64,000 bases of DNA, from NCBI GenBank assembly GCA_964252035.1, contig OZ176201.1, one strand, 5' to 3'. The translations under genes and the position numbers were made by a program. Positions 55,601 through 63,268 of this stretch are shown piece after piece (position 1 is the stretch's first letter; each line of letters begins with the position of its first letter). The DNA comes from Podarcis erhardii. Lineage: Eukaryota. The notes below the pieces were generated by a model. That model was given only the letters and a program-made list of their open reading frames with translations, was not told the DNA's origin and searched no databases.

Positions 55601-58600
55601 TACCGCAAGCAGCATATCAAGCAAAATCCCATATGTGACCATGAGCTGAAACGGCTGGCTCACTTGGAATGGTTAATATACAATGACTGCAGTCCATAAA
55701 GCCGTCCATCAAGATTTAGGCGGTGCTCATTGAAGCTCTTTACAACTGCTTGCACTCATCCCAGCTGCTTTCTTTTCTAGGTTATGGTGGGATATCGCTG
55801 GCAGTTGAAGGACCTAGCAAAGTAGATATCCAGACAGAAGATCTAGAGGATGGAACTTGCAGAGTTTCGTACTTTCCAACTGTACCTGGTGTCTACATAG
55901 TATCTACTAAGTTTGCTGATGAGCACATCCCAGGTAAGAGAAAAAGAGCCTACGTAAGCGAGCCATTGCTGGTCCACTTCCCCATCAGCGCTGACCTCTT
56001 GTAATAAGTGCAGAGTCTATAGGACACCATCTAGGCTTCCCACCAGGGCCTTCATGTTCTGAAAATGCCTGAAGATGCTTGTTTGCTAAATTTTGGAAGG
56101 CAGGATAATAAACTTCTTGCGCACCTTGAAGATGCTTTTGTTTGAGGGGTTGTCTCCTGCTGCAGTGTAACACTTATCTCTTCGCTACTCAAACTAGAAT
56201 ATTGGTTTGGTACAGGTGACTCTCAACATACGTGGGGGTTGCGTTCTAGGGTGTAGCTTGCAAAGCCAAAATCACGAATAGTCAAAATACAGTGGGGTCA
56301 TAGGTGGGTGGGATTGCCAAAGCTTTTTTTTCCCAGGACACCTGCCCCACCTTTAATTAATTTAAAATTCGCAAAGCATGCAAAGCTGAATGTGTGTAAA
56401 TAGCAAGTTAATCTGTGTAGGAAGATGGGGTTACCTTGATAGTCATCGGTGATAAGTCTCATGCTTAATGTGCTTAGTTAACAATGCAGTGGTCCAGCCT
56501 TCCTCAGTGGGAAAGAATTCTAAGATGGTAGCGGAAATAACTATTAGTAGACGATATGTTACTTTATTGCCTGTGAAAGTCTTTGCTTCCTGTACTGATA
56601 GATGGAACTCAGTGTTGTTTTGTCTCTACTAACTACAGGGAGCCCATTTACTGTGAAAATAAGTGGTGAAGGAAGGGTGAAGGAAAGCATTACACGTACT
56701 CGGCGGGCTCCTTCTGTGGCCACGGTTGGAAGCTTGTGTGATCTTAACTTAAAAATTCCAGGTAAGTTAGTTCTACTAATAAATTTACTGTTTTGGAAAC
56801 CATAAACCAATAAGGCATTGAATCTTCTGGGCATTCTTTGCAATCCGATTTAAAAATGGAATGTTTTCCAAATACTTCTAGAGATCAGGGAAGGCATTCT
56901 TATATAGATCGGGGCTTTGCATGGTAGGACTCACACCAATTTCTTCCTTGGCCCCATGAAGCAGCAGTGGCATTTAAATTTTGCTTTCTAGCATATCACC
57001 CACTGACTCAGTTCTAATAACAAGTGACCTGGTTCACATGTAATGCTAAGCGAAACCTGGACTTAAGGTGAATGCATAGGCTATTCAAAATGATATCATT
57101 ATTTTTGCCTCTTAGACCTTCCTCCTGTTGCCTGTCTACCTGAGTCTAAGCCACAATTTGACTTAGCACATGGCTGAACCCAGATTTGTTTTATTAACCA
57201 AGGTTTTTTCCTGGTTTCACAGTTTATGGGTTGTCTAGAGGAAACAAACCATGAGCTTGAGTTTGGGCTACATGTTAAGCCAAACCATGGCTTAACTCAC
57301 TGTAGCACAGCAGTACTGGATGAAGAACAATATGCCCAAAATTTCTGTTCTGGGAATTCATGCATTCATGCTATGTGTGAAGTACGGGTGCTAGGATGAT
57401 CTCAGAAGGTTGTACTTGAGTCACCTGATGCTTGAGTTACCTTCAGCCATATTTTTGGAAGGGTAGGAGCGCAGTTGCTGCTATAGAGATCTGTATCATG
57501 TGGATCTAACTGGGGGAGACGCATAAAATAATTGGCTGGTTAAAGAATAAATGCTATCTTCCTCATAGAGTGCACTAATATACAGAATATATTCAGCATG
57601 CTGCTTCAGTTTAATACATATTCTGACGTCTGTTTCTATCTCTTTCTCTGCTGCTCTAATCAATCTTGGTCTTCCTGTCTTCTGTTCCTTTCTTTCCCCC
57701 TATTGCCTTCTCATAGTTACATGGTTCCAAATGGCTATATCTCTGGAAAGATTGTCCCGTGTTTCACACCAGTTCATTCCCACTTTCCTGTGTGTTGAGC
57801 AGAAGGAAAACTGCCAGACTCAATTGAGAGAATCTTGGTGTCCTAGTTTCACAAAAAAACCAGCCAACATCAGACAACAATGTTTCCAATCGGTCCTTCT
57901 ATGGGATCTACAGATGTATTACATACCTGGCTCCTTAGGGGTAGTGGGTACGTTGTAGTACTGAGGTTGTCCTATAACTGCATTACATACTTCAATAAAA
58001 TCTGCTTTAAGGCGCAATGCATGGCAAGTCAGCAGCAAAAGTATTTGTTACAAAGACCTGTAACAAACCCTCAGTCAGTAATGGAGCCTGTGGCCCTCCA
58101 GATATTGTTGAATTCCAATTCCTATCAGTTCTTAGAATGGGTAATGTTCACTGCACTAAATCCAACTCTGTTCCCAAATAAAATTAGTTTTTTCTTCCTT
58201 TCCTTTCCTTTCCTTTCCTTTCCTTTCCTTTCCTTTCCTTTCAAGAGAACTTCAAAAAATCTTAAGCACAACTCCTCCTGGACATATTTGTCTGTAACCT
58301 GGTAGATTTGATCTCCTCTGTTGTGGGGGGAGTGTATTATGCCTGCAAATTCCATCCTCTTCTGTCAACAGGAAAAGGTCGGGTTTTTTTTACTTTCCAG
58401 TGGGGGATGAAGTGGACTTAAGTTGGGTGATTCAATTCTTGATTCATTTGTCAAGTGCTTCAGAAAGAGGCAGACTGCTTTCTGAATTGTGCACCTGCTG
58501 TATACATTGATTAAGTAAACATTCAAAAAAAGGGGGTGAGTGGGCTCAAATTTAACTCATCCCCCACACTTGAATGCCTGTGACTCAGTGTGAGTGCAGT

Positions 58601-61600
58601 TGAGGCTCCATCCCAATTCCATATTTGCAAGAAAAGGGAGCTGCTTAATATGCTTAAATCTTTTGAAGTATTCTCTTTTCGTTTGAGAGATTCTATAGCT
58701 TCAAAAATGGATGGTTGGGGCTCAAAGAGCAATGTATTGATTTCTCATTACCTGCTGCAAGCTCTCTTAACTCTGCTTTCTGCAGTCAATGGAGACACCG
58801 TGACTTGCTTGTCAAGGGTGGTGGGTGACAAAATAATTGGATTTGTGAAGATTCTTGGTTTTTGAGGTGAACTGATAAGTATGTGCTCGTCCCTAATATA
58901 TATATCTGACACTCTGCATGCACAGGTGAATGCTTGGTATGCATCACTTAATCGTCAGTTATGTTTTGCTGGTTGCAGTTCTGGGAAGTTGAGTTCCATC
59001 AGGTTCCCAGCAAATGTCTGCCAGGTAAAAGTGTTTTGGTGTATGATCTATAGACGAATGTGTACTCAAGGGCCACTTTGCATGTAATGTTTGAGGGCAT
59101 TTCAAACATCTGAAAGCAGCTGACTTTGGAACTTCCTATAGATCCCAAGAACCTCAGTTGTATAGTCAACTAAACTTGGTGTCTGGGTTTGCTATGGGGA
59201 AGGTTTCAAAACAACTGAAATACTGGGGAGCTCTGCCCTCGTGCACTGGGCATTGTGTGACAGAGTAAGATGTTTAGAAACCGAATCTACCTGCTCCCCA
59301 TTAATGGTCAGTTTCTTTCTTTCTTTTTAGAAATCGACATTGGTGACATGTCAGCTCGGGTCACTAGCCCATCTGGGAGAATGACAGATGCAGAAATAGT
59401 AGAGCATGATAAAAACACGTACTGTGTCCGCTTTGTACCACAAGAAATGGGGGTCCATAATGTGGATGTAAAATACAGAGGGCAGCATGTGCCAGGCAGT
59501 CCATTCCAGTTTACCGTTGGGCCGCTTGGTGAAGGAGGGGCCAATAAGGTCAGAGCTGGCGGTCCAGGACTAGAAAGAGCAGAGGCAGGCATCCCAGGTA
59601 AGACCTTCACTAAATTTCATCTGAATGCATGGGCATGGGTCTAAGGGCCTTGCAGTGAGAGGGGACAATAGCTGTAATCTTGGAACAGGGTACTTATACC
59701 TTGTAACACTAGAACACATTTCTGGAAGCCTAGTGACCCTGCCTTGTGTTGCAGAGCCCCATATCACAAAGGGATTGGAGGGCCACTTGCCTGCTTCTAA
59801 TTCCTGGGTGGTTGTTGTTGTTGTTAACAGCTGAGTTCAGCATCTGGACAAGGGAAGCTGGAGCTGGAGGTCTTTCCATTGCAGTAGAAGGACCAAGTAA
59901 GGCAGAAATTGCTTTTGAAGACCATAAAGATGGATCGTGTGGTGTATCATACACTGCTCAAGAGCCTGGTATGGATATCTTAAGCATTAGCAAGTTGAAA
60001 TGAAGCAAAACACCACAAAAACAATTCCTCCTTGCTTAGCAAAGTTCTTATTTCTTCCAGGTAACTACGAGGTGTCCATCAAATTCAACGATGAGCATAT
60101 TCCGGAAAGCCCTTACCTGGTTCCTGTGATTGCTCCTTCCGATGATGCTCGTAGGCTCACTGTTATGAGCCTTCAGGTGAGACATAAGGAAGCATCTCCC
60201 ATAGCCTACCACAAGCTGATACCATCCTTGTGCTCAAGCTCCTTAAAATTATTACTTGCTCACTAGCTACACTTCTTCAGAGGAGATCCCTTGGCAAGCA
60301 TGTAGGCCTTCCAAGTTAGGAAACAGCATCTGAAAAGGGGCGACTCTTTCCTAGTGCTATTCAGCTAAGGAACAACTATAGCCTCCATTCTCCCCGCACA
60401 GTGGCACTAAGCAGTTCTATAAACCTTGCTGTTAATTTTCTCACAAGGTTTGTCTATGTATGACAGCGTTCAGCAATGAAGCAATACTAAGTGGGGTAAG
60501 TTGGCTTGCATGATTGCATGCTGACAAGGCAGTTAGGCTAACATGCAACATTTCAGCTTGGCGTATGCTCCAAGAATGCACATGCTTGAACAAATGAGGC
60601 TCTGGGGTGAGCACAGAGCAGTAATTCACACATGTGCAGATGTTGCAAAACCACAAACTTGTACTTTAAATGGTTCTTAAACAGCAGCCAAAGTCTGAGT
60701 GGATTCCAGACTTCTAGTGGCTTGAGTTTGTACATAGTCCTGACTTTTTCGTGGTGTGCATCTAGCAACATTTTTAAGTGACTGTCTTTAATCTAAAATA
60801 AGAAGCCTGGAAGTTTCAGATTGAGCGTCATCCAGCCCATGATGTGTAGATTTGCTGCAGCTTGAGGCAGCAGTATTGGTTAAATTGCACTGCTTTTCAG
60901 AACTATGGTTTTATAGACTGACATTTGGTGTAACTTTCTAGCCAGAGCTGAACTTAAAACAAGGAGTTACAAGGACGATAATTAGCTGCTGTGGTACTGA
61001 TGTTTTTCTTGTGTTTCATTTAAAGACTCTTGACAGAATGTGTGGTGTCAGCTGACTTAAACCCTGAAGAGGGAAATAAAACTGATATTTTTTTGGGGGG
61101 GGGGAGGAGTAATCTTTTTACAAAAGATGTCTTTTGGCACTCCATAAAAAACTTCCTTGGTGTATTTTAGCTGCCTGTTTCAGTTTATTTCTCTCTTGAG
61201 GATAAAACTGTTAAGTTGAAATTAAGGTAAGCTCTGCACTGAAAGCAAAAGCTCAGCATTCCAGCGACCCTCCCCCCCGATGGAACTTCAATTTTCCAGT
61301 GGCTGGGGGCGGGAATCACACATGCATAACACCAGGAGACTCTGTTTTTTTGTATGTGTGGTGACCGCTACTGGGGAGCAGGTGTGCATTGATATATACT
61401 TTTGGTTCCACCTTTGCTGGCATGTTAACAGAAATCTCCAAAACGTTGTATTTGTTGGCATGGGGTGAAACATGCTTTGCTTAATCAGAAAGCTCCAGGC
61501 TTAATTGTCGGTGCAATATGGAAATTTATTTTTGGCAGCATATTAATGAGTTAGCTACACAATTAGGAAAAGAGATTTCAAGTGATTTTGGGAGTATGGC

Positions 61601-61823
61601 AAAGCAAATTCAGCCCAGACAACCATAAAGATTTGGGCAGCGCAAGCATTTTGTTTTAAAGCTAATGCATTTGATGATTTGGGGGCTGGCATCCTACATT
61701 TGTAGCAAAATGATGACCTTGCATACTTATAGTCAGACCAGAAAAAAGTGTGTGGGTAGACAAACTTAACCAAGCCCACACTTTGGGAATGTATCGTACT
61801 GCTGTTGAGGAATATAATTAGTT

Positions 61824-61875
<52 letters not shown>

Positions 61876-62817
61876 TTTATTTATACCCTGCCCTCCCTGG
61901 CCAGAACCGGGATCAGGGCGGCTAACACCAATCAAAATTACAATAAAACATAATGGGGGGGGGACAGTTAATTAAAATACAGGTTAAAATACCATTTAAA
62001 ATGCTGCCTCATTTTAGTAGTAGCCCATAAATCAAAACTATGAGGGGAGGGACACATAAGGGTCAGACTGAGTCCAAACCAAAGGCCAGGCGGGACAGCT
62101 CTATCTTGCAGGCCCTGCGGAAAGATGTCAAGTCCCGCAGGGCTCTAGTCTCTTGTGACAGAGCGTTCCACCAAGTCGGGGCCAGTACTGAAAAGGCCCT
62201 GGCCCTAGTTGAGACAAATCTAACCACCTTGCGGCTCAAGACCTCTAAAGTGTTGTTATTTGTGGACCTTAAGGTCCTCTGCGGGGCATACCAGGAGAAA
62301 AGATCACATCACTTAGTGGTATCTGGAACCCTCAGAACTAGGAAGTTAAAAATAAAAAATATTCCTAGTTTTAAGACATGAGAATACTCAGTTGAGAAGA
62401 GCATAACATACAGCAGGGTTAGGGGTGCCTGTGTCCTTGTCAGACACATTTTTGTAAATAGTGAGACTGATAACGTTTTTCCACGGCCATAACTTCTGTG
62501 ATGCAATAACTTTACATTTGCAAATGTGGTACAGGGCGACCACGTGTCAAATATTGGTTCTGTGTTAGACAAAATATGCAAAGCTGCTGCTATATTTCGG
62601 AGACAGTAAAGGACCGAACTGTTATATATTCCTTGCAAGCCAAATGTCAATATGTATGTGAGGATTTTACTATTGCGTTGTTAGGAGTCTGGGTTGAAGG
62701 TTAACCAGCCAGCATCCTTCGCTATAAGGCTTAACGGGGCAAAGGGCAAGATTGACGCTAAAGTGCATAGCCCAATTGGAGCTGTAGAAGAATGCCATGT
62801 TTCTGAACTGGAGCAAG
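11428..62817 (+). CDS. FLNB: Filamin B spliced CDS, partial (exons 2-42; exon 1 upstream and exons 43-46 downstream of the window)
   Basis: 41 exons join in one frame (6735 nt) via GT-AG introns plus one GC-AG intron. FLNB-diagnostic peptides: [94 protein letters not shown] and hinge ACPPGFxPW. Exon lengths and phases match recalled human FLNB. Confidence 0.98.
12819..12916 (+). CDS. FLNB: FLNB exon 3 (98 nt)
   Basis: cactag|GT CTC TGC ... CCT CAG|gtatgg; [33 protein letters not shown]. Confidence 0.97.
13924..14071 (+). CDS. FLNB: FLNB exon 4 (148 nt)
   Basis: ttaccag|GTC ATC GCT ... GGC AGA G|gtgagg; [49 protein letters not shown] (absent from ORF track). Confidence 0.97.
15610..15728 (+). 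CDS. FLNB: FLNB exon 5 (119 nt)
   Basis: cctgcag|GA ATT GAA ... GAA GAG|gtatgc; [40 protein letters not shown]. Confidence 0.97.
16111..16188 (+). CDS. FLNB: FLNB exon 6 (78 nt)
   Basis: ccttag|GCC ATG GTG ... CAC AAG|gtaaga; [26 protein letters not shown]. Confidence 0.96.
16731..16893 (+). CDS. FLNB: FLNB exon 7 (163 nt)
   Basis: atctag|GTT ACA GTT ... ACA GCA G|gtaaga; [54 protein letters not shown]. Confidence 0.97.
18356..18553 (+). CDS. FLNB: FLNB exon 8 (198 nt)
   Basis: ttgtag|GG GCT GGT ... GGT GAA G|gtatgt; [38 protein letters not shown]...SPWGIHVGE. Confidence 0.97.
18937..19024 (+). other. FLNB: Candidate poison (NMD) cassette exon in FLNB intron 8, 88 nt
   Basis: Preceded by an AG-free pyrimidine-rich zone 18816-18934, acceptor tttcag| and donor TCG|gtaaga. 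Read from exon 8 (phase 1) it gives [23 protein letters not shown] with TAG at 19005-19007. Confidence 0.7.
20031..20104. mobile_element. Interspersed repeat fragment (Penelope-like terminus)
   Basis: CCAGTAGCACCTTAAAGACCAAC...GCTTTCGTGTGCATGCACAC, near-identical to 37152-37214; family assignment from memory. Confidence 0.5.
20438..20575 (+). CDS. FLNB: FLNB exon 9 (138 nt)
   Basis: ttgcag|CG TGC AAT ... GGA CCA A|gtaagt; [46 protein letters not shown]. Confidence 0.97.
20936..20967. repeat. (GT)16 microsatellite
   Basis: Direct reading. Confidence 0.95.
22170..22296 (+). CDS. FLNB: FLNB exon 10 (127 nt)
   Basis: ctgcag|AA GGT CTG ... CCT AAA AG|gtgagt; [42 protein letters not shown]. Confidence 0.96.
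22421..22650 (+). mobile_element. Sauria SINE, 5'-truncated with internal deletion
   Basis: GCAAGTAGATAAATAGGTACC core and GGTCAGGGGTACCTTTACCTTT tail, homologous to 54699-55047. Confidence 0.9.
23362..23498 (+). CDS. FLNB: FLNB exon 11 (137 nt)
   Basis: tcatag|C CCA TTT ... TCC TTA G|gtaaga; [45 protein letters not shown]. Confidence 0.97.
23838..24020 (-). mobile_element. MIR/Ther1-like squamate SINE (Squam3-like), internally deleted
   Basis: Minus strand: GGTTAGAGTGCTGGACTGGGTGGCCTTGGGGCTAGTCACAGTCTCTCAGCCTCACAGGGTTGTTGTGAAG. Confidence 0.65.
24266..24459 (+). CDS. FLNB: FLNB exon 12 (194 nt; GC donor)
   Basis: ttttag|GT TTT GCT ... GAC AAG|gcaagt; [65 protein letters not shown]. Confidence 0.95.
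24875..24988 (+). CDS. FLNB: FLNB exon 13 (114 nt)
   Basis: tcttag|GTA AAA GCT ... GCA CAG|gtaagg; [38 protein letters not shown]. Confidence 0.97.
25778..25921 (+). CDS. FLNB: FLNB exon 14 (144 nt)
   Basis: taacag|GAT GCA GAA ... TAC AGG|gtaagt; [48 protein letters not shown]. Confidence 0.97.
26968..27091 (+). CDS. FLNB: FLNB exon 15 (124 nt)
   Basis: ccctag|GTC CAG ATT ... GGA GAA G|gtaaaa; [41 protein letters not shown]. Confidence 0.97.
27221..27350. mobile_element. Degenerate palindromic hAT-type MITE
   Basis: AGATGTTGC...CAACTCCTATCAGC...GTAGTTCAACAACATCTGGAGGG. Confidence 0.55.
27436..27596 (+). CDS. FLNB: FLNB exon 16 (161 nt)
   Basis: tcctag|GT GAT GTC ... GGA GAG|gtatgt; [54 protein letters not shown]. 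Confidence 0.97.
28312..28500. mobile_element. Tc1/mariner-type MITE, family A copy 2 (inverted relative to copies 1 and 3, one end degraded)
   Basis: TA|CAGTGGTACCTC...; internal CACTTTAGCTAATGGGG and TTCTCATCCTGAAGCAAAGTTCTTAACCTGAGG are reverse complements of copy 1. Confidence 0.75.
28705..28795 (+). CDS. FLNB: FLNB exon 17 (91 nt)
   Basis: ttgaag|GAA ATC CCT ... AAA ACA G|gtgaga; [30 protein letters not shown]. Confidence 0.96.
29248..29417 (+). CDS. FLNB: FLNB exon 18 (170 nt)
   Basis: acttag|GT GTG GAA ... CAG CAG|gtagga; [28 protein letters not shown]...[11 protein letters not shown]. Confidence 0.97.
31595..31879 (+). mobile_element. L2 LINE 3' fragment
   Basis: Encodes L2 ORF2 C-terminus-like [39 protein letters not shown], followed by a typical tail GTGAACCGCCCCGAGACC. 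Confidence 0.8.
31880..32241 (-). mobile_element. Sauria SINE, full length, inserted in the L2 tail
   Basis: Reverse complement of the 54699 copy; flanks TATAGGGCAGTATA (31866-79) / TATAGGGCGGGATA (32242-55). Confidence 0.92.
32889..33006 (+). CDS. FLNB: FLNB exon 19 (118 nt)
   Basis: ttctag|GGT AGC ATG ... GAA AAC A|gtaagt; [39 protein letters not shown]. Confidence 0.97.
33829..33964. mobile_element. Palindromic hAT MITE
   Basis: TIR CAGGCATAGGCAAACT / AGTTTGCCTATGCCTG with near-palindromic interior; 8-bp flanks CTCTGCTA/CTCTACCA. Confidence 0.85.
34588..34850 (+). CDS. FLNB: FLNB exon 20 (263 nt)
   Basis: ctgaag|GA GTC GAA ... TCC AAG|gtaagc; [25 protein letters not shown]...[10 protein letters not shown]. 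Confidence 0.97.
35951..36548 (+). CDS. FLNB: FLNB exon 21 (598 nt)
   Basis: tcccag|GTG AGA GCC ... GGA AAA G|gtatgc; [27 protein letters not shown]...[11 protein letters not shown]. Confidence 0.98.
36589..37135 (-). mobile_element. CR1 LINE 3' fragment
   Basis: Minus-strand CR1 ORF2 C-terminal peptides [29 protein letters not shown] and [33 protein letters not shown], frameshifted; CR1 3' UTR follows. Confidence 0.93.
37141..37214. mobile_element. Interspersed repeat fragment (Penelope-like terminus)
   Basis: Homologous to 20031-20104; truncated next to the MITE at 37221. Confidence 0.5.
37221..37429. mobile_element. Tc1/mariner-type MITE, family A copy 3
   Basis: TA|CAGCGGTACCTCAGGTTAT ... 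ATAACCAGAGGTACCACTG|TA, both TA TSDs intact. Confidence 0.88.
37798..37971 (+). CDS. FLNB: FLNB exon 22 (174 nt)
   Basis: tcatag|AT GTT TTC ... GAA AGA G|gtaaag; [34 protein letters not shown]...FTPYER. Confidence 0.97.
38082..38480. mobile_element. Older palindromic hAT MITE split by a nested insertion
   Basis: Halves CCTCCAGATGCTGCTAGACTAAAACTCCCATC...(38103-38162) and GGGAGTTGTAGTTGAACAAAAT...(38433-38480) rejoin across CTGGCTGG. Confidence 0.7.
38163..38432. mobile_element. Nested non-autonomous hAT element (270 bp)
   Basis: TIRs CAGAGCCATAGCTAGG / CCTAGCTACGGTCCTG (13/16); perfect 8-bp TSD CTGGCTGG at 38155-62 and 38433-40. Confidence 0.85.
38495..38629. mobile_element. Palindromic hAT MITE
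   Basis: CAGGCACCCCAAAACTCGGCCCTCCAG ... CTGGAGGGCCGAGTTTGGGGATGCCTG; perfect TSD TTCTAGAG at 38487-94 and 38630-37. Confidence 0.9.
38764..38926 (+). CDS. FLNB: FLNB exon 23 (163 nt)
   Basis: ttgcag|GT CCT CAC ... GTC ACT CG|gtaagt; [55 protein letters not shown]. Confidence 0.97.
39513..39673 (+). CDS. FLNB: FLNB exon 24 (161 nt)
   Basis: ttgcag|A GGG GCT ... ATC CCT G|gtaaga; [53 protein letters not shown]. Confidence 0.97.
39981..40140 (-). mobile_element. tRNA-Ala-like SINE (Squam2-like)
   Basis: Minus strand: GTGGCTCAGTGGCTGAGCATCAGCTTCGCATGCAAGAAATCCCAG...CAGGTAGGGCTGGGAG...GCTGCCAGTTAGTGTCAACAACACTGAACTAG. Confidence 0.7.
40454..40621 (+). CDS. FLNB: FLNB exon 25 (168 nt)
   Basis: tggcag|GC AGT CCA ... 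CCC AGA G|gtaatg; [25 protein letters not shown]...LEVTVTAPR. Confidence 0.97.
40928..41177. mobile_element. Tc1/mariner-type MITE, family B
   Basis: TA|CAGTTGTATCTTGG ... CTAAGGTACGACTG|TA; central perfect 18-bp inverted repeat. Confidence 0.82.
42446..42538 (+). CDS. FLNB: FLNB alternative 93-nt cassette exon (31-aa insert)
   Basis: ttctag|CT GAT GAG ... GAG ACA G|gtttga; phase 1-1; [31 protein letters not shown], matching the recalled human long-isoform insert [31 protein letters not shown]. Confidence 0.9.
42551..42560 (+). promoter_or_regulatory. Bipartite QKI response element downstream of the 93-nt exon
   Basis: ACTAAC-TAAT starts 13 nt after the donor and matches the NACUAAY-N(1-20)-UAAY type. 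Confidence 0.55.
43652..43682. repeat. (TG)15 microsatellite
   Basis: Direct reading. Confidence 0.95.
43778..43901 (+). CDS. FLNB: FLNB exon 26 (124 nt)
   Basis: acttag|GC TTG GCA ... CGC AG|gtaaga; [41 protein letters not shown]. Confidence 0.97.
44593..44749 (+). CDS. FLNB: FLNB exon 27 (157 nt)
   Basis: caacag|C CCG TTC ... GTG ACC|gtaaga; [32 protein letters not shown]...LLSVHVT. Confidence 0.97.
45537..45816 (-). mobile_element. Sauria SINE, distinct subfamily with internal deletion
   Basis: (AAAGGT)n tail; tRNA head GGATTCGAACC; perfect 12-bp TSD AGTATAAACCTA at 45525-36 and 45817-28. Confidence 0.92.
46257..46446 (+). CDS. FLNB: FLNB exon 28 (190 nt)
   Basis: attcag|GAC CAA GAA ... 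GCA ACA G|gtaaag; [63 protein letters not shown]. Confidence 0.97.
46606..46696 (-). mobile_element. tRNA-Ala-like SINE fragment
   Basis: Minus strand GCAGCTCAGTGGTAGAGCATCTGCTTTGCATGCAGAAGG, then GGCTAGGGCTG...CCACTGCCAGTCAG; same family as 39981-40140. Confidence 0.7.
47649..47896 (+). CDS. FLNB: FLNB exon 29 (248 nt)
   Basis: tcctag|GT CCT GGC ... GTC ATG|gtaaga; [30 protein letters not shown]...PNSPFTVM. Confidence 0.97.
48549..48554 (+). promoter_or_regulatory. QKI-type ACTAAC motif abutting the hinge-1 exon acceptor
   Basis: ACTAAC ends 1 nt before the acceptor AG (48556-57), too close to serve as branch point. Confidence 0.6.
48558..48635 (+). CDS. FLNB: FLNB exon 30, hinge 1 (78 nt, alternative)
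   Basis: actaactag|GCT ACA GAT ... CCC TGG|gtacct; [26 protein letters not shown] vs recalled human ATDGEVTAVEEAPVNACPPGFRPW; phase 0-0. Confidence 0.9.
49248..49350 (+). CDS. FLNB: FLNB exon 31 (103 nt)
   Basis: caatag|GTC ACG GAA ... ATA ACT G|gtaaac; [34 protein letters not shown]. Confidence 0.96.
49393..49514. mobile_element. Degenerate palindromic hAT-type MITE
   Basis: CAGTGGTGAGGACCCTGTGGCC...GATGTTGG...CAACATCTGGAGAGCCACAG. Confidence 0.5.
49795..50345 (-). mobile_element. L2 LINE 3' fragment with two tail-like segments
   Basis: GAGAGCATTCCACAAGTGGGAAGCCACTGCAGAAAAGACC is the antisense L2 ORF2 end (same family as 31595); ATT-rich tails at about 49795 and 49905. Confidence 0.75.
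50702..50842 (+). CDS. FLNB: FLNB exon 32 (141 nt)
   Basis: tttcag|GG GAA GTT ... ATT CCA G|gtgagt; [47 protein letters not shown]. Confidence 0.97.
52792..52920 (+). CDS. FLNB: FLNB exon 33 (129 nt)
   Basis: ttgcag|AG AGC CCT ... GGT GAG G|gtaagt; [43 protein letters not shown]. Confidence 0.97.
53722..53895 (+). CDS. FLNB: FLNB exon 34 (174 nt)
   Basis: tgacag|GT GGC CTG ... ATC ACA G|gtacga; [35 protein letters not shown]...SPFTAKIT. Confidence 0.97.
54368..54526 (+). CDS. FLNB: FLNB exon 35 (159 nt)
   Basis: ttaaag|AT GAC AAT ... CAC ATT G|gtaagt; [53 protein letters not shown]. Confidence 0.97.
54699..55047 (+). mobile_element. Sauria SINE, full length
   Basis: A box TGGCACTGTGG 54708-18, B box GGTTCGAATCC 54761-71, (ACCTTT)n Bov-B-type tail; TSD CTATCTTACAG/CTATCTTCCAG. 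Confidence 0.95.
55158..55361 (+). CDS. FLNB: FLNB exon 36 (204 nt)
   Basis: tggcag|GT ATC TCA ... GAT GCA G|gtcagt; [40 protein letters not shown]...FIVDTRDA. Confidence 0.97.
55781..55933 (+). CDS. FLNB: FLNB exon 37 (153 nt)
   Basis: ttctag|GT TAT GGT ... ATC CCA G|gtaaga; [51 protein letters not shown]. Confidence 0.97.
56627..56633 (+). promoter_or_regulatory. QKI-type TACTAAC motif abutting the exon 38 acceptor
   Basis: TACTAAC ends 3 nt before the acceptor AG (56637-38); second ACTAAT at 56775-56780 just after the donor. Confidence 0.55.
56639..56761 (+). CDS. FLNB: FLNB exon 38 (123 nt; the 41-aa var-1 skippable exon, Ig19-20 junction)
   Basis: tactaactacag|GG AGC CCA ... ATT CCA G|gtaagt; [41 protein letters not shown]; phase 1-1. 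Confidence 0.96.
57717..57947 (+). other. FLNB: Candidate cryptic/vestigial FLNB exon homologous to the filamin-C Ig20 insertion (231 nt, in frame)
   Basis: AG-free pyrimidine tract 57610-57714, acceptor tcatag| and candidate donor G|gtacgt. Phase 1-1 with no stop. Peptide [15 protein letters not shown]... vs recalled FLNC GNWFQMVSAQERLTR... Confidence 0.65.
58195..58242. repeat. (TTCCT)9 pentanucleotide repeat
   Basis: Direct reading. Confidence 0.95.
59331..59597 (+). CDS. FLNB: FLNB exon 39 (267 nt)
   Basis: ttttag|AA ATC GAC ... ATC CCA G|gtaaga; [41 protein letters not shown]...ERAEAGIP. Confidence 0.97.
59831..59968 (+). CDS. FLNB: FLNB exon 40 (138 nt)
   Basis: taacag|CT GAG TTC ... 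GAG CCT G|gtatgg; [46 protein letters not shown]. Confidence 0.97.
60061..60176 (+). CDS. FLNB: FLNB exon 41 (116 nt; ends in the Q/R editing codon)
   Basis: ttccag|GT AAC TAC ... CTT CAG|gtgaga; [39 protein letters not shown]; preceding intron only 92 nt. Confidence 0.97.
60560..60619 (+). promoter_or_regulatory. Candidate editing-complementary sequence (ECS) for the exon 41 Q/R site
   Basis: Colinear antiparallel complementarity: GAGC 60616-19 with GCTC 60147-50; GTGAGC 60607-12 with GCTCAC 60155-60; TGAGGCTC 60595-602 with GAGCC(T)TCA 60167-75; ATGCTT 60582-87 with AAGCAT 60190-95; GGCGTATG 60560-67 with CATAGCC 60200-06. Confidence 0.6.
61826..61873. repeat. (TAA)16 microsatellite (tail of adjacent L2)
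   Basis: Direct reading; contiguous with the L2 3' UTR. Confidence 0.95.
61874..62305 (-). mobile_element. L2 LINE 3' fragment
   Basis: TTTATACCCTGCCCTCCC tail motif and antisense ORF2 end (GACAGAGCGTTCCACCAAGTCGGGGCCAGTACTGAAAAGGCCC). Confidence 0.8.
62685..62817 (+). CDS. FLNB: FLNB exon 42 (133 nt)
   Basis: tgttag|GAG TCT GGG ... GAG CAA G|gtaagg; [44 protein letters not shown]. Confidence 0.97.
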
Positions 62818-63268
62818 GTAAGGATGTGTCGTAAATTTGGTACTCAAAACTGCTTTAAATACGTAAACAGTCAAAATGGTTGTAAGAGTTAAACAGGAGG
62901 TGGCCATTTCAGTTCATGCCAGTATAGAAACATGTTCAACAGTGATTGGATGTTTATTGTACAAAGGACTGTGTTCCACAAAGGAGTTTAGTACTACTTC
63001 CTTGGTGGTAAAAGGAAAAAAGGAAGTACTGAACAAAATACTTCCGCATAACCCATTTTAAGGCTAATTGGCATGTGCACTTTACCACAACCCCAGTTGT
63101 TGTTTATGCAGAGAGAAAGTCCTCCTGTGAACAGAGGTGTGCATGAGGTTGCATGTGCTAATAGCTCAGTTGAATGGCTGCATATGCATCTTTCTGCACA
63201 TTAGAGAGATTGCTTCACAACTTTTAGCTAAATTGTGGACCAAGGAAAAGTTATAATCCTACATAGGG

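What the first reader, a model, noticed from the sequence alone, without database searches (positions are those of the whole stretch)
60147..60619. ADAR Q/R recoding codon at the end of exon 41 with a candidate long-range complementary sequence
Seen: exon 41 ends ...RRLTVMSLQ with CAG|gt; the A is at 60175, position -2 of the donor. A segment about 420 nt downstream (60560-60619) pairs in five colinear antiparallel blocks with 60147-60206, placing A60175 opposite U60595 in an imperfect duplex. Established: this codon is the mammalian FLNB Q2327R / FLNA Q2341R ADAR2 recoding site in Ig22, which depends on an intronic ECS. Inference: recoding, and its coupling to splicing of intron 41, is retained in this lizard.
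Basis: partly seen in the sequence, partly recalled or inferred. Interest (0 to 1): 0.75.

Follow-up and report, generated by a model that had tools for sequence, protein, structure and literature searches.

The report
Lizard filamin-B editing site, corrected partner

Summary
The exon and codon are exactly as described. A filamin-B exon (60061-60176) ends ...RRLTVMSLQ with CAG|GTGAGA, and the A is at 60175.

RNA evidence supports editing. In two stranded RNA-seq runs of a closely related lineage, 7 of 30 spliced exon 41-42 reads carry G at 60175 (25% and 21%).

- Its duplex is within chance (9 of 150 shuffles do as well).
- It has zero probability in the folding ensemble.
- It is not conserved in any other vertebrate contig.
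- It carries three substitutions in the sister lineage.

The real editing complementary sequence is 60999-61036 (extended 60988-61052):
- It pairs with 60160-60196, with A60175:U61021 and C60174 opposite A61022, covering the whole 5' splice site.
- It is the only intron block conserved in sauropsid-like, mammal-like and teleost contigs, including Cirrhinus mrigala.
- All 256 pair cells across 8 sequences are standard pairs, and two pairs show compensatory change.

This is an orthologue of the known mammalian FLNB Q/R site, so it is an ordinary, modestly interesting result. It remains open whether G at 61022 in the RNA reflects editing or a lineage SNP.

The parts
60061..60176 (+). Filamin-B exon ('exon 41', end of Ig21 and start of Ig22) ending ...RRLTVMSLQ
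   Evidence: Translation. PDB Filamin-B 2ee6_A and 2eeb_A. Spliced to 62685 in RNA reads.
60175..60175 (+). Q/R adenosine (CAG to CIG), position -2 of the donor
   Evidence: Read as G in 4/16 (X23) and 3/14 (X24) junction-spanning reads. It is A in the window and in DNA contigs of X15. It pairs with U61021 at p 0.81-0.83.
60177..60182 (+). 5' splice site GTGAGA, fully inside the duplex. The +4 A at 60180 matches the intronic adenosine edited in mouse Flnb.
   Evidence: Mouse data from PMC6161736.
60160..60196 (+). 5' arm of the conserved helix (lizard-specific extension 60147-60205). It contains A60165 (M/V position), A60168 (S/G position) and A60175.
   Evidence: RNAalifold consensus and pair table. 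Intron part 60177-60196 is invariant in 16/20 columns, against 2/18 just beyond it.
60999..61036 (+). Editing complementary sequence (core). The extended pairing in the lizard is 60988-61052.
   Evidence: Best duplex in the intron, -52.8, reached by 1/150 shuffles. Ensemble p 0.8-1.0. MFE and centroid of 60140-61060 both close on it. 31/38 columns are invariant in 8 vertebrate sequences, against 3/33 and 2/34 in the flanks. It is the only conserved intron block.
61022..61022 (+). ECS adenosine opposite C60174 (an A-C mismatch invariant in 8 sequences). It reads G in RNA of the sister lineage.
   Evidence: invariant. (G in the X1 RNA contig and in 1/1 X24 read; A in X15 DNA). (four DNA runs of organism A hold all 12 sampled words of the A version; one holds 9/12).
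60555..60620 (+).
   Evidence: Three transversions in the sister lineage, at 60555, 60572 and 60585.
60177..62684 (+). Intron 41 (2508 nt)
   Evidence: Joint 'skips 2508, GT..AG' in 23 reads.
62685..62816 (+). Start of the next exon ([12 protein letters not shown]..., Ig22)

Best explanation
A60175 is the lizard orthologue of the FLNB Q/R A-to-I recoding site, and it is edited.

- Duplex: once about 850 nt of intron 41 has been transcribed, the ECS at 60999-61036 folds back on 60160-60196. The result is an imperfect duplex of at least 32 bp (about 49 bp in the lizard with its distal extension).
- Geometry at the site: A60175 pairs with U61021. Its 5' neighbour C60174 faces A61022, and its 3' neighbour is G.
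- Enzyme: an ADAR deaminates A60175. By analogy with mouse this would be ADAR2; that step is inferred.
- Timing: the duplex contains the entire 5' splice site (60174-60182), so editing can only occur before intron 41 is removed. The helix must melt before U1 can bind.
- Effect on the donor: the edit changes position -2 (CAG to CIG).

Shown here: the codon, the duplex, its deep conservation with pair-preserving changes, and G at 60175 in about 23% of spliced reads. Inferred: which enzyme acts, any effect on splicing efficiency, and the protein consequence.
For: - Codon and gene identity.
- RNA: 4/16 and 3/14 junction reads read C-G-G instead of C-A-G. They come from 4 and 3 different start positions and from the strand expected for + strand RNA.
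  - P of 7 or more of 30 by 1% error is 2e-8. P of 7 or fewer of 30 under a 50% allele is 0.003.
  - The X1 RNA intron contig starts exactly at 60176, as expected of an assembly bubble at 60175.
- Structure:
  - The best duplex in the intron is -52.8, against a null of -42.2 with sd 3.4, reached by 1/150 shuffles.
  - Ensemble pairing is 0.8-1.0.
  - MFE and centroid of 60140-61060 both contain the helix, z -2.0, 0/20 shuffles.
- Comparative:
  - An independent duplex scan finds the same element as top partner in 7 of 8 FLNB-type sequences, 553-1170 nt downstream.
  - An exact 16-mer is shared with L001-L005.
  - 32 consensus pairs give 256/256 standard cells and 7 variable pairs that all keep pairing. 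Two are compensatory (60164:61032 UG/CG/UA; 60184:61012 AU/GU/GC). Slid registers give 41-57% paired.
  - Conservation stops sharply at the helix ends.
- Literature: mouse Flnb Q/R is ADAR2-dependent and uses a downstream intronic ECS forming a long stem that includes the 5' splice site (PMC6161736). FLNB Q/R is edited in human, mouse, rat and platypus (PMC4053846).
Against: - The RNA runs belong to a lineage that differs from the window by about 1.8% in this intron. No DNA of the same individuals was laid, so a genomic A/G polymorphism at 60175 is not formally excluded.
- Only 30 junction reads were available, and the tissues are unknown.
- Most helix columns are invariant. Covariation is therefore modest: 15/500 column shuffles also reach 100% pairing.
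- All comparison contigs except L009 carry no organism label.
- No editing was reported at 60168 or 60180. Coverage was too low to tell.
Confidence: 0.8

Rival explanations
1. The functional ECS is the reader's segment 60560-60619, about 420 nt downstream, alone or as an alternative partner.
For: It is the second-best duplex partner in the intron (-47.7). It is closer to the site, so it is transcribed earlier than 60999-61036.
Against: - 9/150 shuffles do as well.
- It needs a 7-nt loop next to the site.
- Ensemble probability is 0.00 once 60999-61036 is present.
- No similarity in any other contig, including the sauropsid-like ones.
- Three transversions in 66 nt in the sister lineage rearrange the site-proximal pairs, yet that lineage still shows G at 60175.
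Confidence: 0.03
2. The G at 60175 in RNA reads is a genomic A/G polymorphism, or allele-specific expression, in the sequenced animals and not editing.
For: No matched DNA was available. The RNA lineage is 1.8% diverged from the window in this intron.
Against: - Both samples show 21-25%, not 50% (P 0.003).
- The position is exactly the adenosine edited in mammals (PMC4053846, PMC6161736).
- The window and X15 DNA have A.
- The CAG codon is present in all 73 filamin exon ORFs whose sequence carried the ...ARRLTV.SL(Q/R) exon end; the other 3 of the 76 hits did not carry it.
Confidence: 0.07
3. The conserved element 60994-61039 exists mainly to sequester the 5' splice site of intron 41 (splicing control). 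Editing would then be a by-product of the duplex.
For: The helix covers 60174-60182 completely. In mouse, edited Flnb pre-mRNA is spliced less efficiently (PMC6161736).
Against: - The helix extends 17 nt into the exon across the edited codon.
- It keeps an invariant A-C mismatch beside the edited A.
- The two functions are not exclusive, and nothing here separates them.
Confidence: 0.1

Closest known systems
Mammalian FLNB Q/R (human Q2327R) ADAR2 recoding site with downstream intronic ECS (Czermak et al. 2018, PMC6161736; Pinto et al. 2014, PMC4053846)
   Same: - Same codon, at position -2 of the donor of the same exon.
- The S/G-position adenosine lies 7 nt upstream (60168) and the +4 intronic adenosine is present (60180).
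- A long stem forms with a downstream intronic ECS and includes the 5' splice site.
- Partial editing of spliced mRNA.
- The ECS core is shared with mammal-like contigs L003-L005 and L010.
   Different: - The host is a squamate, for which I found no report.
- The ECS lies 834 nt from the exon end, against 1148-1170 nt in the mammal-like contigs and 553-880 nt in the fish-like ones.
- The donor is GTGAGA, against GTGAGG in mouse.
- Enzyme dependence is untested.
- The published mouse ECS is only available as a figure, so it was not compared directly.
FLNA Q/R (Q2341R) site with ECS in intron 42 (Levanon et al. 2005; Jain et al. 2018, PMC6166124)
   Same: - Paralogous codon at the same position of Ig22.
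- An intronic ECS is required for editing: deleting 228 bp abolishes it.
- A conserved edited intronic adenosine lies close to the Q/R site in the fold (PMC4053846).
   Different: - It is a different gene.
- In human the conserved edited intronic adenosine lies 213 nt from the Q/R site, which suggests a much nearer ECS than here.
- The one FLNA-like non-human contig I fetched (L016) showed no convincing partner within 875 nt, so homology of the two ECSs is untested.
GRIA2 Q/R site (exon 11 / intron 11 ECS)
   Same: General mechanism, from established knowledge: an exonic adenosine is edited through an exon-intron duplex, so editing must precede splicing.
   Different: Unrelated gene and sequence. 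GRIA2 is edited to nearly 100% (Pinto Table S3 values), whereas this site is edited to about 23%.

Membership tests
FLNB Q/R ADAR recoding site | Orthologous CAG (Gln) codon as last codon of the Ig21/Ig22 exon of filamin-B, with the A at -2 of the donor | tested here: met
   The junction is used in RNA.
FLNB Q/R ADAR recoding site | A-to-G difference between RNA and genomic DNA at that adenosine | tested here: met
   4/16 and 3/14 spliced reads carry G, while the window and X15 DNA carry A. Caveat: the RNA comes from a 1.8%-diverged lineage with no matched DNA.
FLNB Q/R ADAR recoding site | Intronic editing complementary sequence forming an imperfect duplex over the site | tested here: met
   60999-61036 pairs with 60160-60196.
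FLNB Q/R ADAR recoding site | ECS orthologous to that of other vertebrates | tested here: met
   The same element is present in 7 other FLNB-type sequences, including Cirrhinus mrigala, with pair-preserving changes. Most contigs are unlabelled. The published mouse ECS (figure only) was not compared.
FLNB Q/R ADAR recoding site | Dependence on ADAR2 (ADARB1) | not testable with these tools
   Known for mouse only (PMC6161736).
FLNB Q/R ADAR recoding site | Companion sites: S/G 7 nt upstream and the intronic +4 adenosine | tested here: inconclusive
   The adenosines are present and paired (60168:61028, 60180:61016). No A>G row was shown for them, at a depth of about 9-11, and 125 rows were not displayed.

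The most novel reading that the evidence does not exclude
The exon-ECS duplex is an ancient module kept from teleosts to amniotes with an invariant A-C mismatch next to the Q/R adenosine. The ECS adenosine of that mismatch (61022) is itself edited to near completion in pre-mRNA. That would convert A-C into I-C, tighten the helix over the 5' splice site, and so tune both Q/R editing and splicing of intron 41.
Probability: 0.4. Interest if true: 0.45.

Novelty: new member of a known kind. Interest (0 to 1): 0.3.

Why it matters
- It extends direct RNA evidence for the filamin-B Q/R edit to a squamate.
- It locates the guiding intron element precisely, which gives a clean target for ECS-deletion or minigene tests.
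- The same element is the only conserved piece of this intron from carp-like fish to lizards and mammal-like sequences. The recoding system is therefore probably as old as bony vertebrates.
- It is not a surprise to specialists. The site, its dependence on an intronic ECS and its overlap with the splice site are already described in mouse.

Tried and rejected
- Inverted-repeat scan with exact seeds: it missed both candidates because of G:U pairs. It only found 60203-60219 paired with 60553-60569.
- Rfam scan of 59800-62900: only a spurious sub-threshold CrcZ hit on the microsatellite.
- FLNA-like contig L016, fetched to ask whether the FLNA and FLNB ECSs are homologous: no partner better than the null within 875 nt, so no conclusion.
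- Contigs too short to reach the ECS: L007, L008, L011, L013, L014 and L015.
- Second run search, meant to genotype 61022 in DNA: ambiguous. Four organism-A runs hold 12/12 words and one holds 9/12.
- Protein hits with ...TVMSLQ followed by VRRKEAS or VRCKEAS (P0005, P0006, P0025-P0027) could be human or other mammals, so I did not fetch them. No fetched contig was taken for human.

Full report
**What is at the coordinates.** The + strand carries an exon at 60061-60176. In phase it translates to (G)[38 protein letters not shown]. The last codon, CAG, is 60174-60176, the A is at 60175, and the donor GTGAGA follows at 60177-60182. The peptide is 29/29 identical to the end of PDB Filamin-B chain 2ee6_A. 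Its last 14 residues plus the next exon (from 62685, [12 protein letters not shown]...) match Filamin-B 2eeb_A better than Filamin-C. The gene is therefore FLNB, as two earlier notes of this scan also say. Intron 41 is 60177-62684.

- Complementarity between 60147-60206 and 60560-60619 exists but is weak. RNAduplex gives -41.7 for those coordinates and -47.7 for 60555-60620.
- A60175 then pairs with U60587 across a 7-nt asymmetric loop, not with U60595.
- When the exon-end segment is dinucleotide-shuffled and rescanned against the intron, 9 of 150 shuffles reach -47.7.
- The fold of 60120-60640 has z = -0.40. It leaves the site unpaired next to a local hairpin.

**A better partner.**
- Scanning 58500-62700 shows the best partner at 60988-61052 (-52.8, against a window background of -28.2 with sd 5.8). 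One of 150 shuffles reaches this.
- The duplex is long and nearly continuous. A60175 pairs with U61021, C60174 faces A61022, and the whole 5' splice site is paired.
- In partition-function folds of 60061-61120 and 60000-61400, positions 60160-60196 pair with 60999-61036 at p 0.8-1.0 (A60175:U61021 at 0.81-0.83).
- The tool fold of 60140-61060 closes this helix in both MFE and centroid (z -2.0, 0/20 shuffles).

**Comparative evidence: sources.** A protein search with the ORF that runs from the exon into the intron returned 76 similar exon ORFs from unlabelled Logan, ENA and JGI contigs and one NCBI genome. In the 73 of these whose sequence carried the ...ARRLTV.SL(Q/R) exon end, it reads ...SLQ followed by V (GT...). 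I fetched FLNB-type contigs. Hits that could be human (the ...TVMSLQ / VRRKEAS or VRCKEAS types) were left alone.

**Comparative evidence: results.**
- Eight distinct sequences reach far enough downstream:
  - the window;
  - L001 and L002, which align through intron 40 and so are sauropsid-like;
  - L003 and L010, from gut-metagenome host DNA, mammal-like by inference;
  - L006;
  - L009, from Cirrhinus mrigala;
  - L012, teleost-like.
- In 7 of the 8, an independent duplex scan picks the same element as best partner, 553-1170 nt downstream. In L002 it is a close runner-up.
- An exact 16-mer of the ECS is shared with L001-L005.
- By blastn, the only intron block of the lizard that matches anything is 60958-61089 (sauropsid-like) or 60994-61039 (mammal-like and fish). 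Nothing matches 60555-60620.
- Conservation has sharp edges that coincide with the helix.

| Region | Invariant columns |
|---|---|
| Intron 5' arm, 60177-60196 | 16/20 |
| Just beyond it, 60197-60214 | 2/18 |
| ECS, 60999-61036 | 31/38 |
| Flank upstream of the ECS, 60966-60998 | 3/33 |
| Flank downstream of the ECS, 61037-61070 | 2/34 |

- RNAalifold on the two arms gives 32 pairs. All 256 cells are standard pairs. Seven pairs vary and all keep pairing. Two change on both sides (60164:61032 UG/CG/UA; 60184:61012 AU/GU/GC). Sliding the 3' arm by 1-3 columns drops pairing to 41-57%.
- Because most columns are invariant, the column-shuffle control is weak: 15/500 shuffles also reach 100%.
- A distal helix beyond an internal loop (lizard 60199-60205 with 60988-60994) is present in each species with different sequences.
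- The C60174 / A61022 mismatch is invariant.

**RNA evidence.** Two stranded bulk RNA-seq runs (X23, X24) give 12 and 11 reads across the canonical junction 60176|62685. A further 4 and 3 reads have a joint written as 60174 to 62684 with one letter G between. These are spliced reads that read C-G-G where the genome has C-A-G. The G fraction at 60175 is therefore 25% and 21%, from 4 and 3 distinct start positions, on the strand expected for FLNB sense RNA. This is far above sequencing error and below a 50% allele (P 0.003 pooled). X1, labelled a guess, is RNA: exon 42 has depth about 450 against 14.5 in the intron, and one contig joins exon 42 to the next exon. Its intron contig starts exactly at 60176, as expected if the assembly graph branches at 60175.

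**Caveats on the RNA evidence.**
- The window is identical to DNA contigs of organism D (X15). The RNA runs (organism A) share the variants of X1, about 1.8% different in this intron. The RNA is therefore from a close lineage, not the same animal, and no matched DNA was laid.
- In the same lineage the 234 nt around the real ECS carry one change, 61022 A>G, exactly opposite C60174.

**The 61022 question.** Whether the G at 61022 is editing of an A in an ideal A-C context or a lineage SNP is open.
- For editing:
  - The A is invariant in 8 vertebrates.
  - Four organism-A DNA runs hold all 12 sampled words of the A version.
- For a SNP: another organism-A run holds 9/12 words, as a single SNP would give.

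**Mechanism and comparison.** Everything matches the described mammalian FLNB site.
- Mouse Flnb: Q/R editing by ADAR2, an S/G site 7 nt upstream, an edited +4 intronic adenosine, and a long stem with a downstream intronic ECS that includes the 5' splice site. Editing lowers the donor score, and edited pre-mRNA is spliced less well (PMC6161736).
- Other mammals: the site is edited in human, mouse, rat and platypus (PMC4053846).
- FLNA paralogue: deleting its ECS abolishes editing (PMC6166124).
- Lizard: the companion adenosines are present (60168, 60180) and are paired.

I found no report on squamates and no Rfam family. This is a new member of a known kind.

Noticed in passing
window 61972-62298: High-copy interspersed repeat inside intron 41. 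Summed contig depth rises from about 21 to more than 600,000 in DNA run X15. RNA reads cover it on both strands with many loose ends, so these are transcripts from copies elsewhere in the genome.
   Followed up: no
window 61813-61885: AT-rich trinucleotide microsatellite (ATA/TAA-type run). Reads are cut there, and it gave a spurious sub-threshold Rfam CrcZ hit.
   Followed up: no
window 61022: The ECS adenosine opposite C60174 reads G in RNA of the sister lineage (X1 contig, one X24 read). It is A in the window, in X15 DNA and in 8 vertebrate sequences. It is either a strongly edited intronic site or a lineage SNP that closes the conserved A-C mismatch.
   Followed up: partly
window 60958-60998 and 60197-60235: In sauropsid-like contigs conservation extends beyond the core helix on both arms, and an amniote-wide GT(T/A)(A/C)CAAGG motif lies at 60966. 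This suggests a longer, lineage-specific extension of the stem.
   Followed up: partly
window 59800-62900 versus runs X1 and X15: The window is letter-identical to DNA contigs labelled organism D. Runs labelled organism A fall into window-like samples (12/12 words) and a form about 1.8% diverged. The species labels therefore hide deep lineages or mislabelled samples.
   Followed up: no
L016 (FLNA-like contig), 1247: A paralogous filamin exon also ends ...SLQ with CAG|GTGAGGCAC, but no convincing complementary partner lies within 875 nt downstream.
   Followed up: partly
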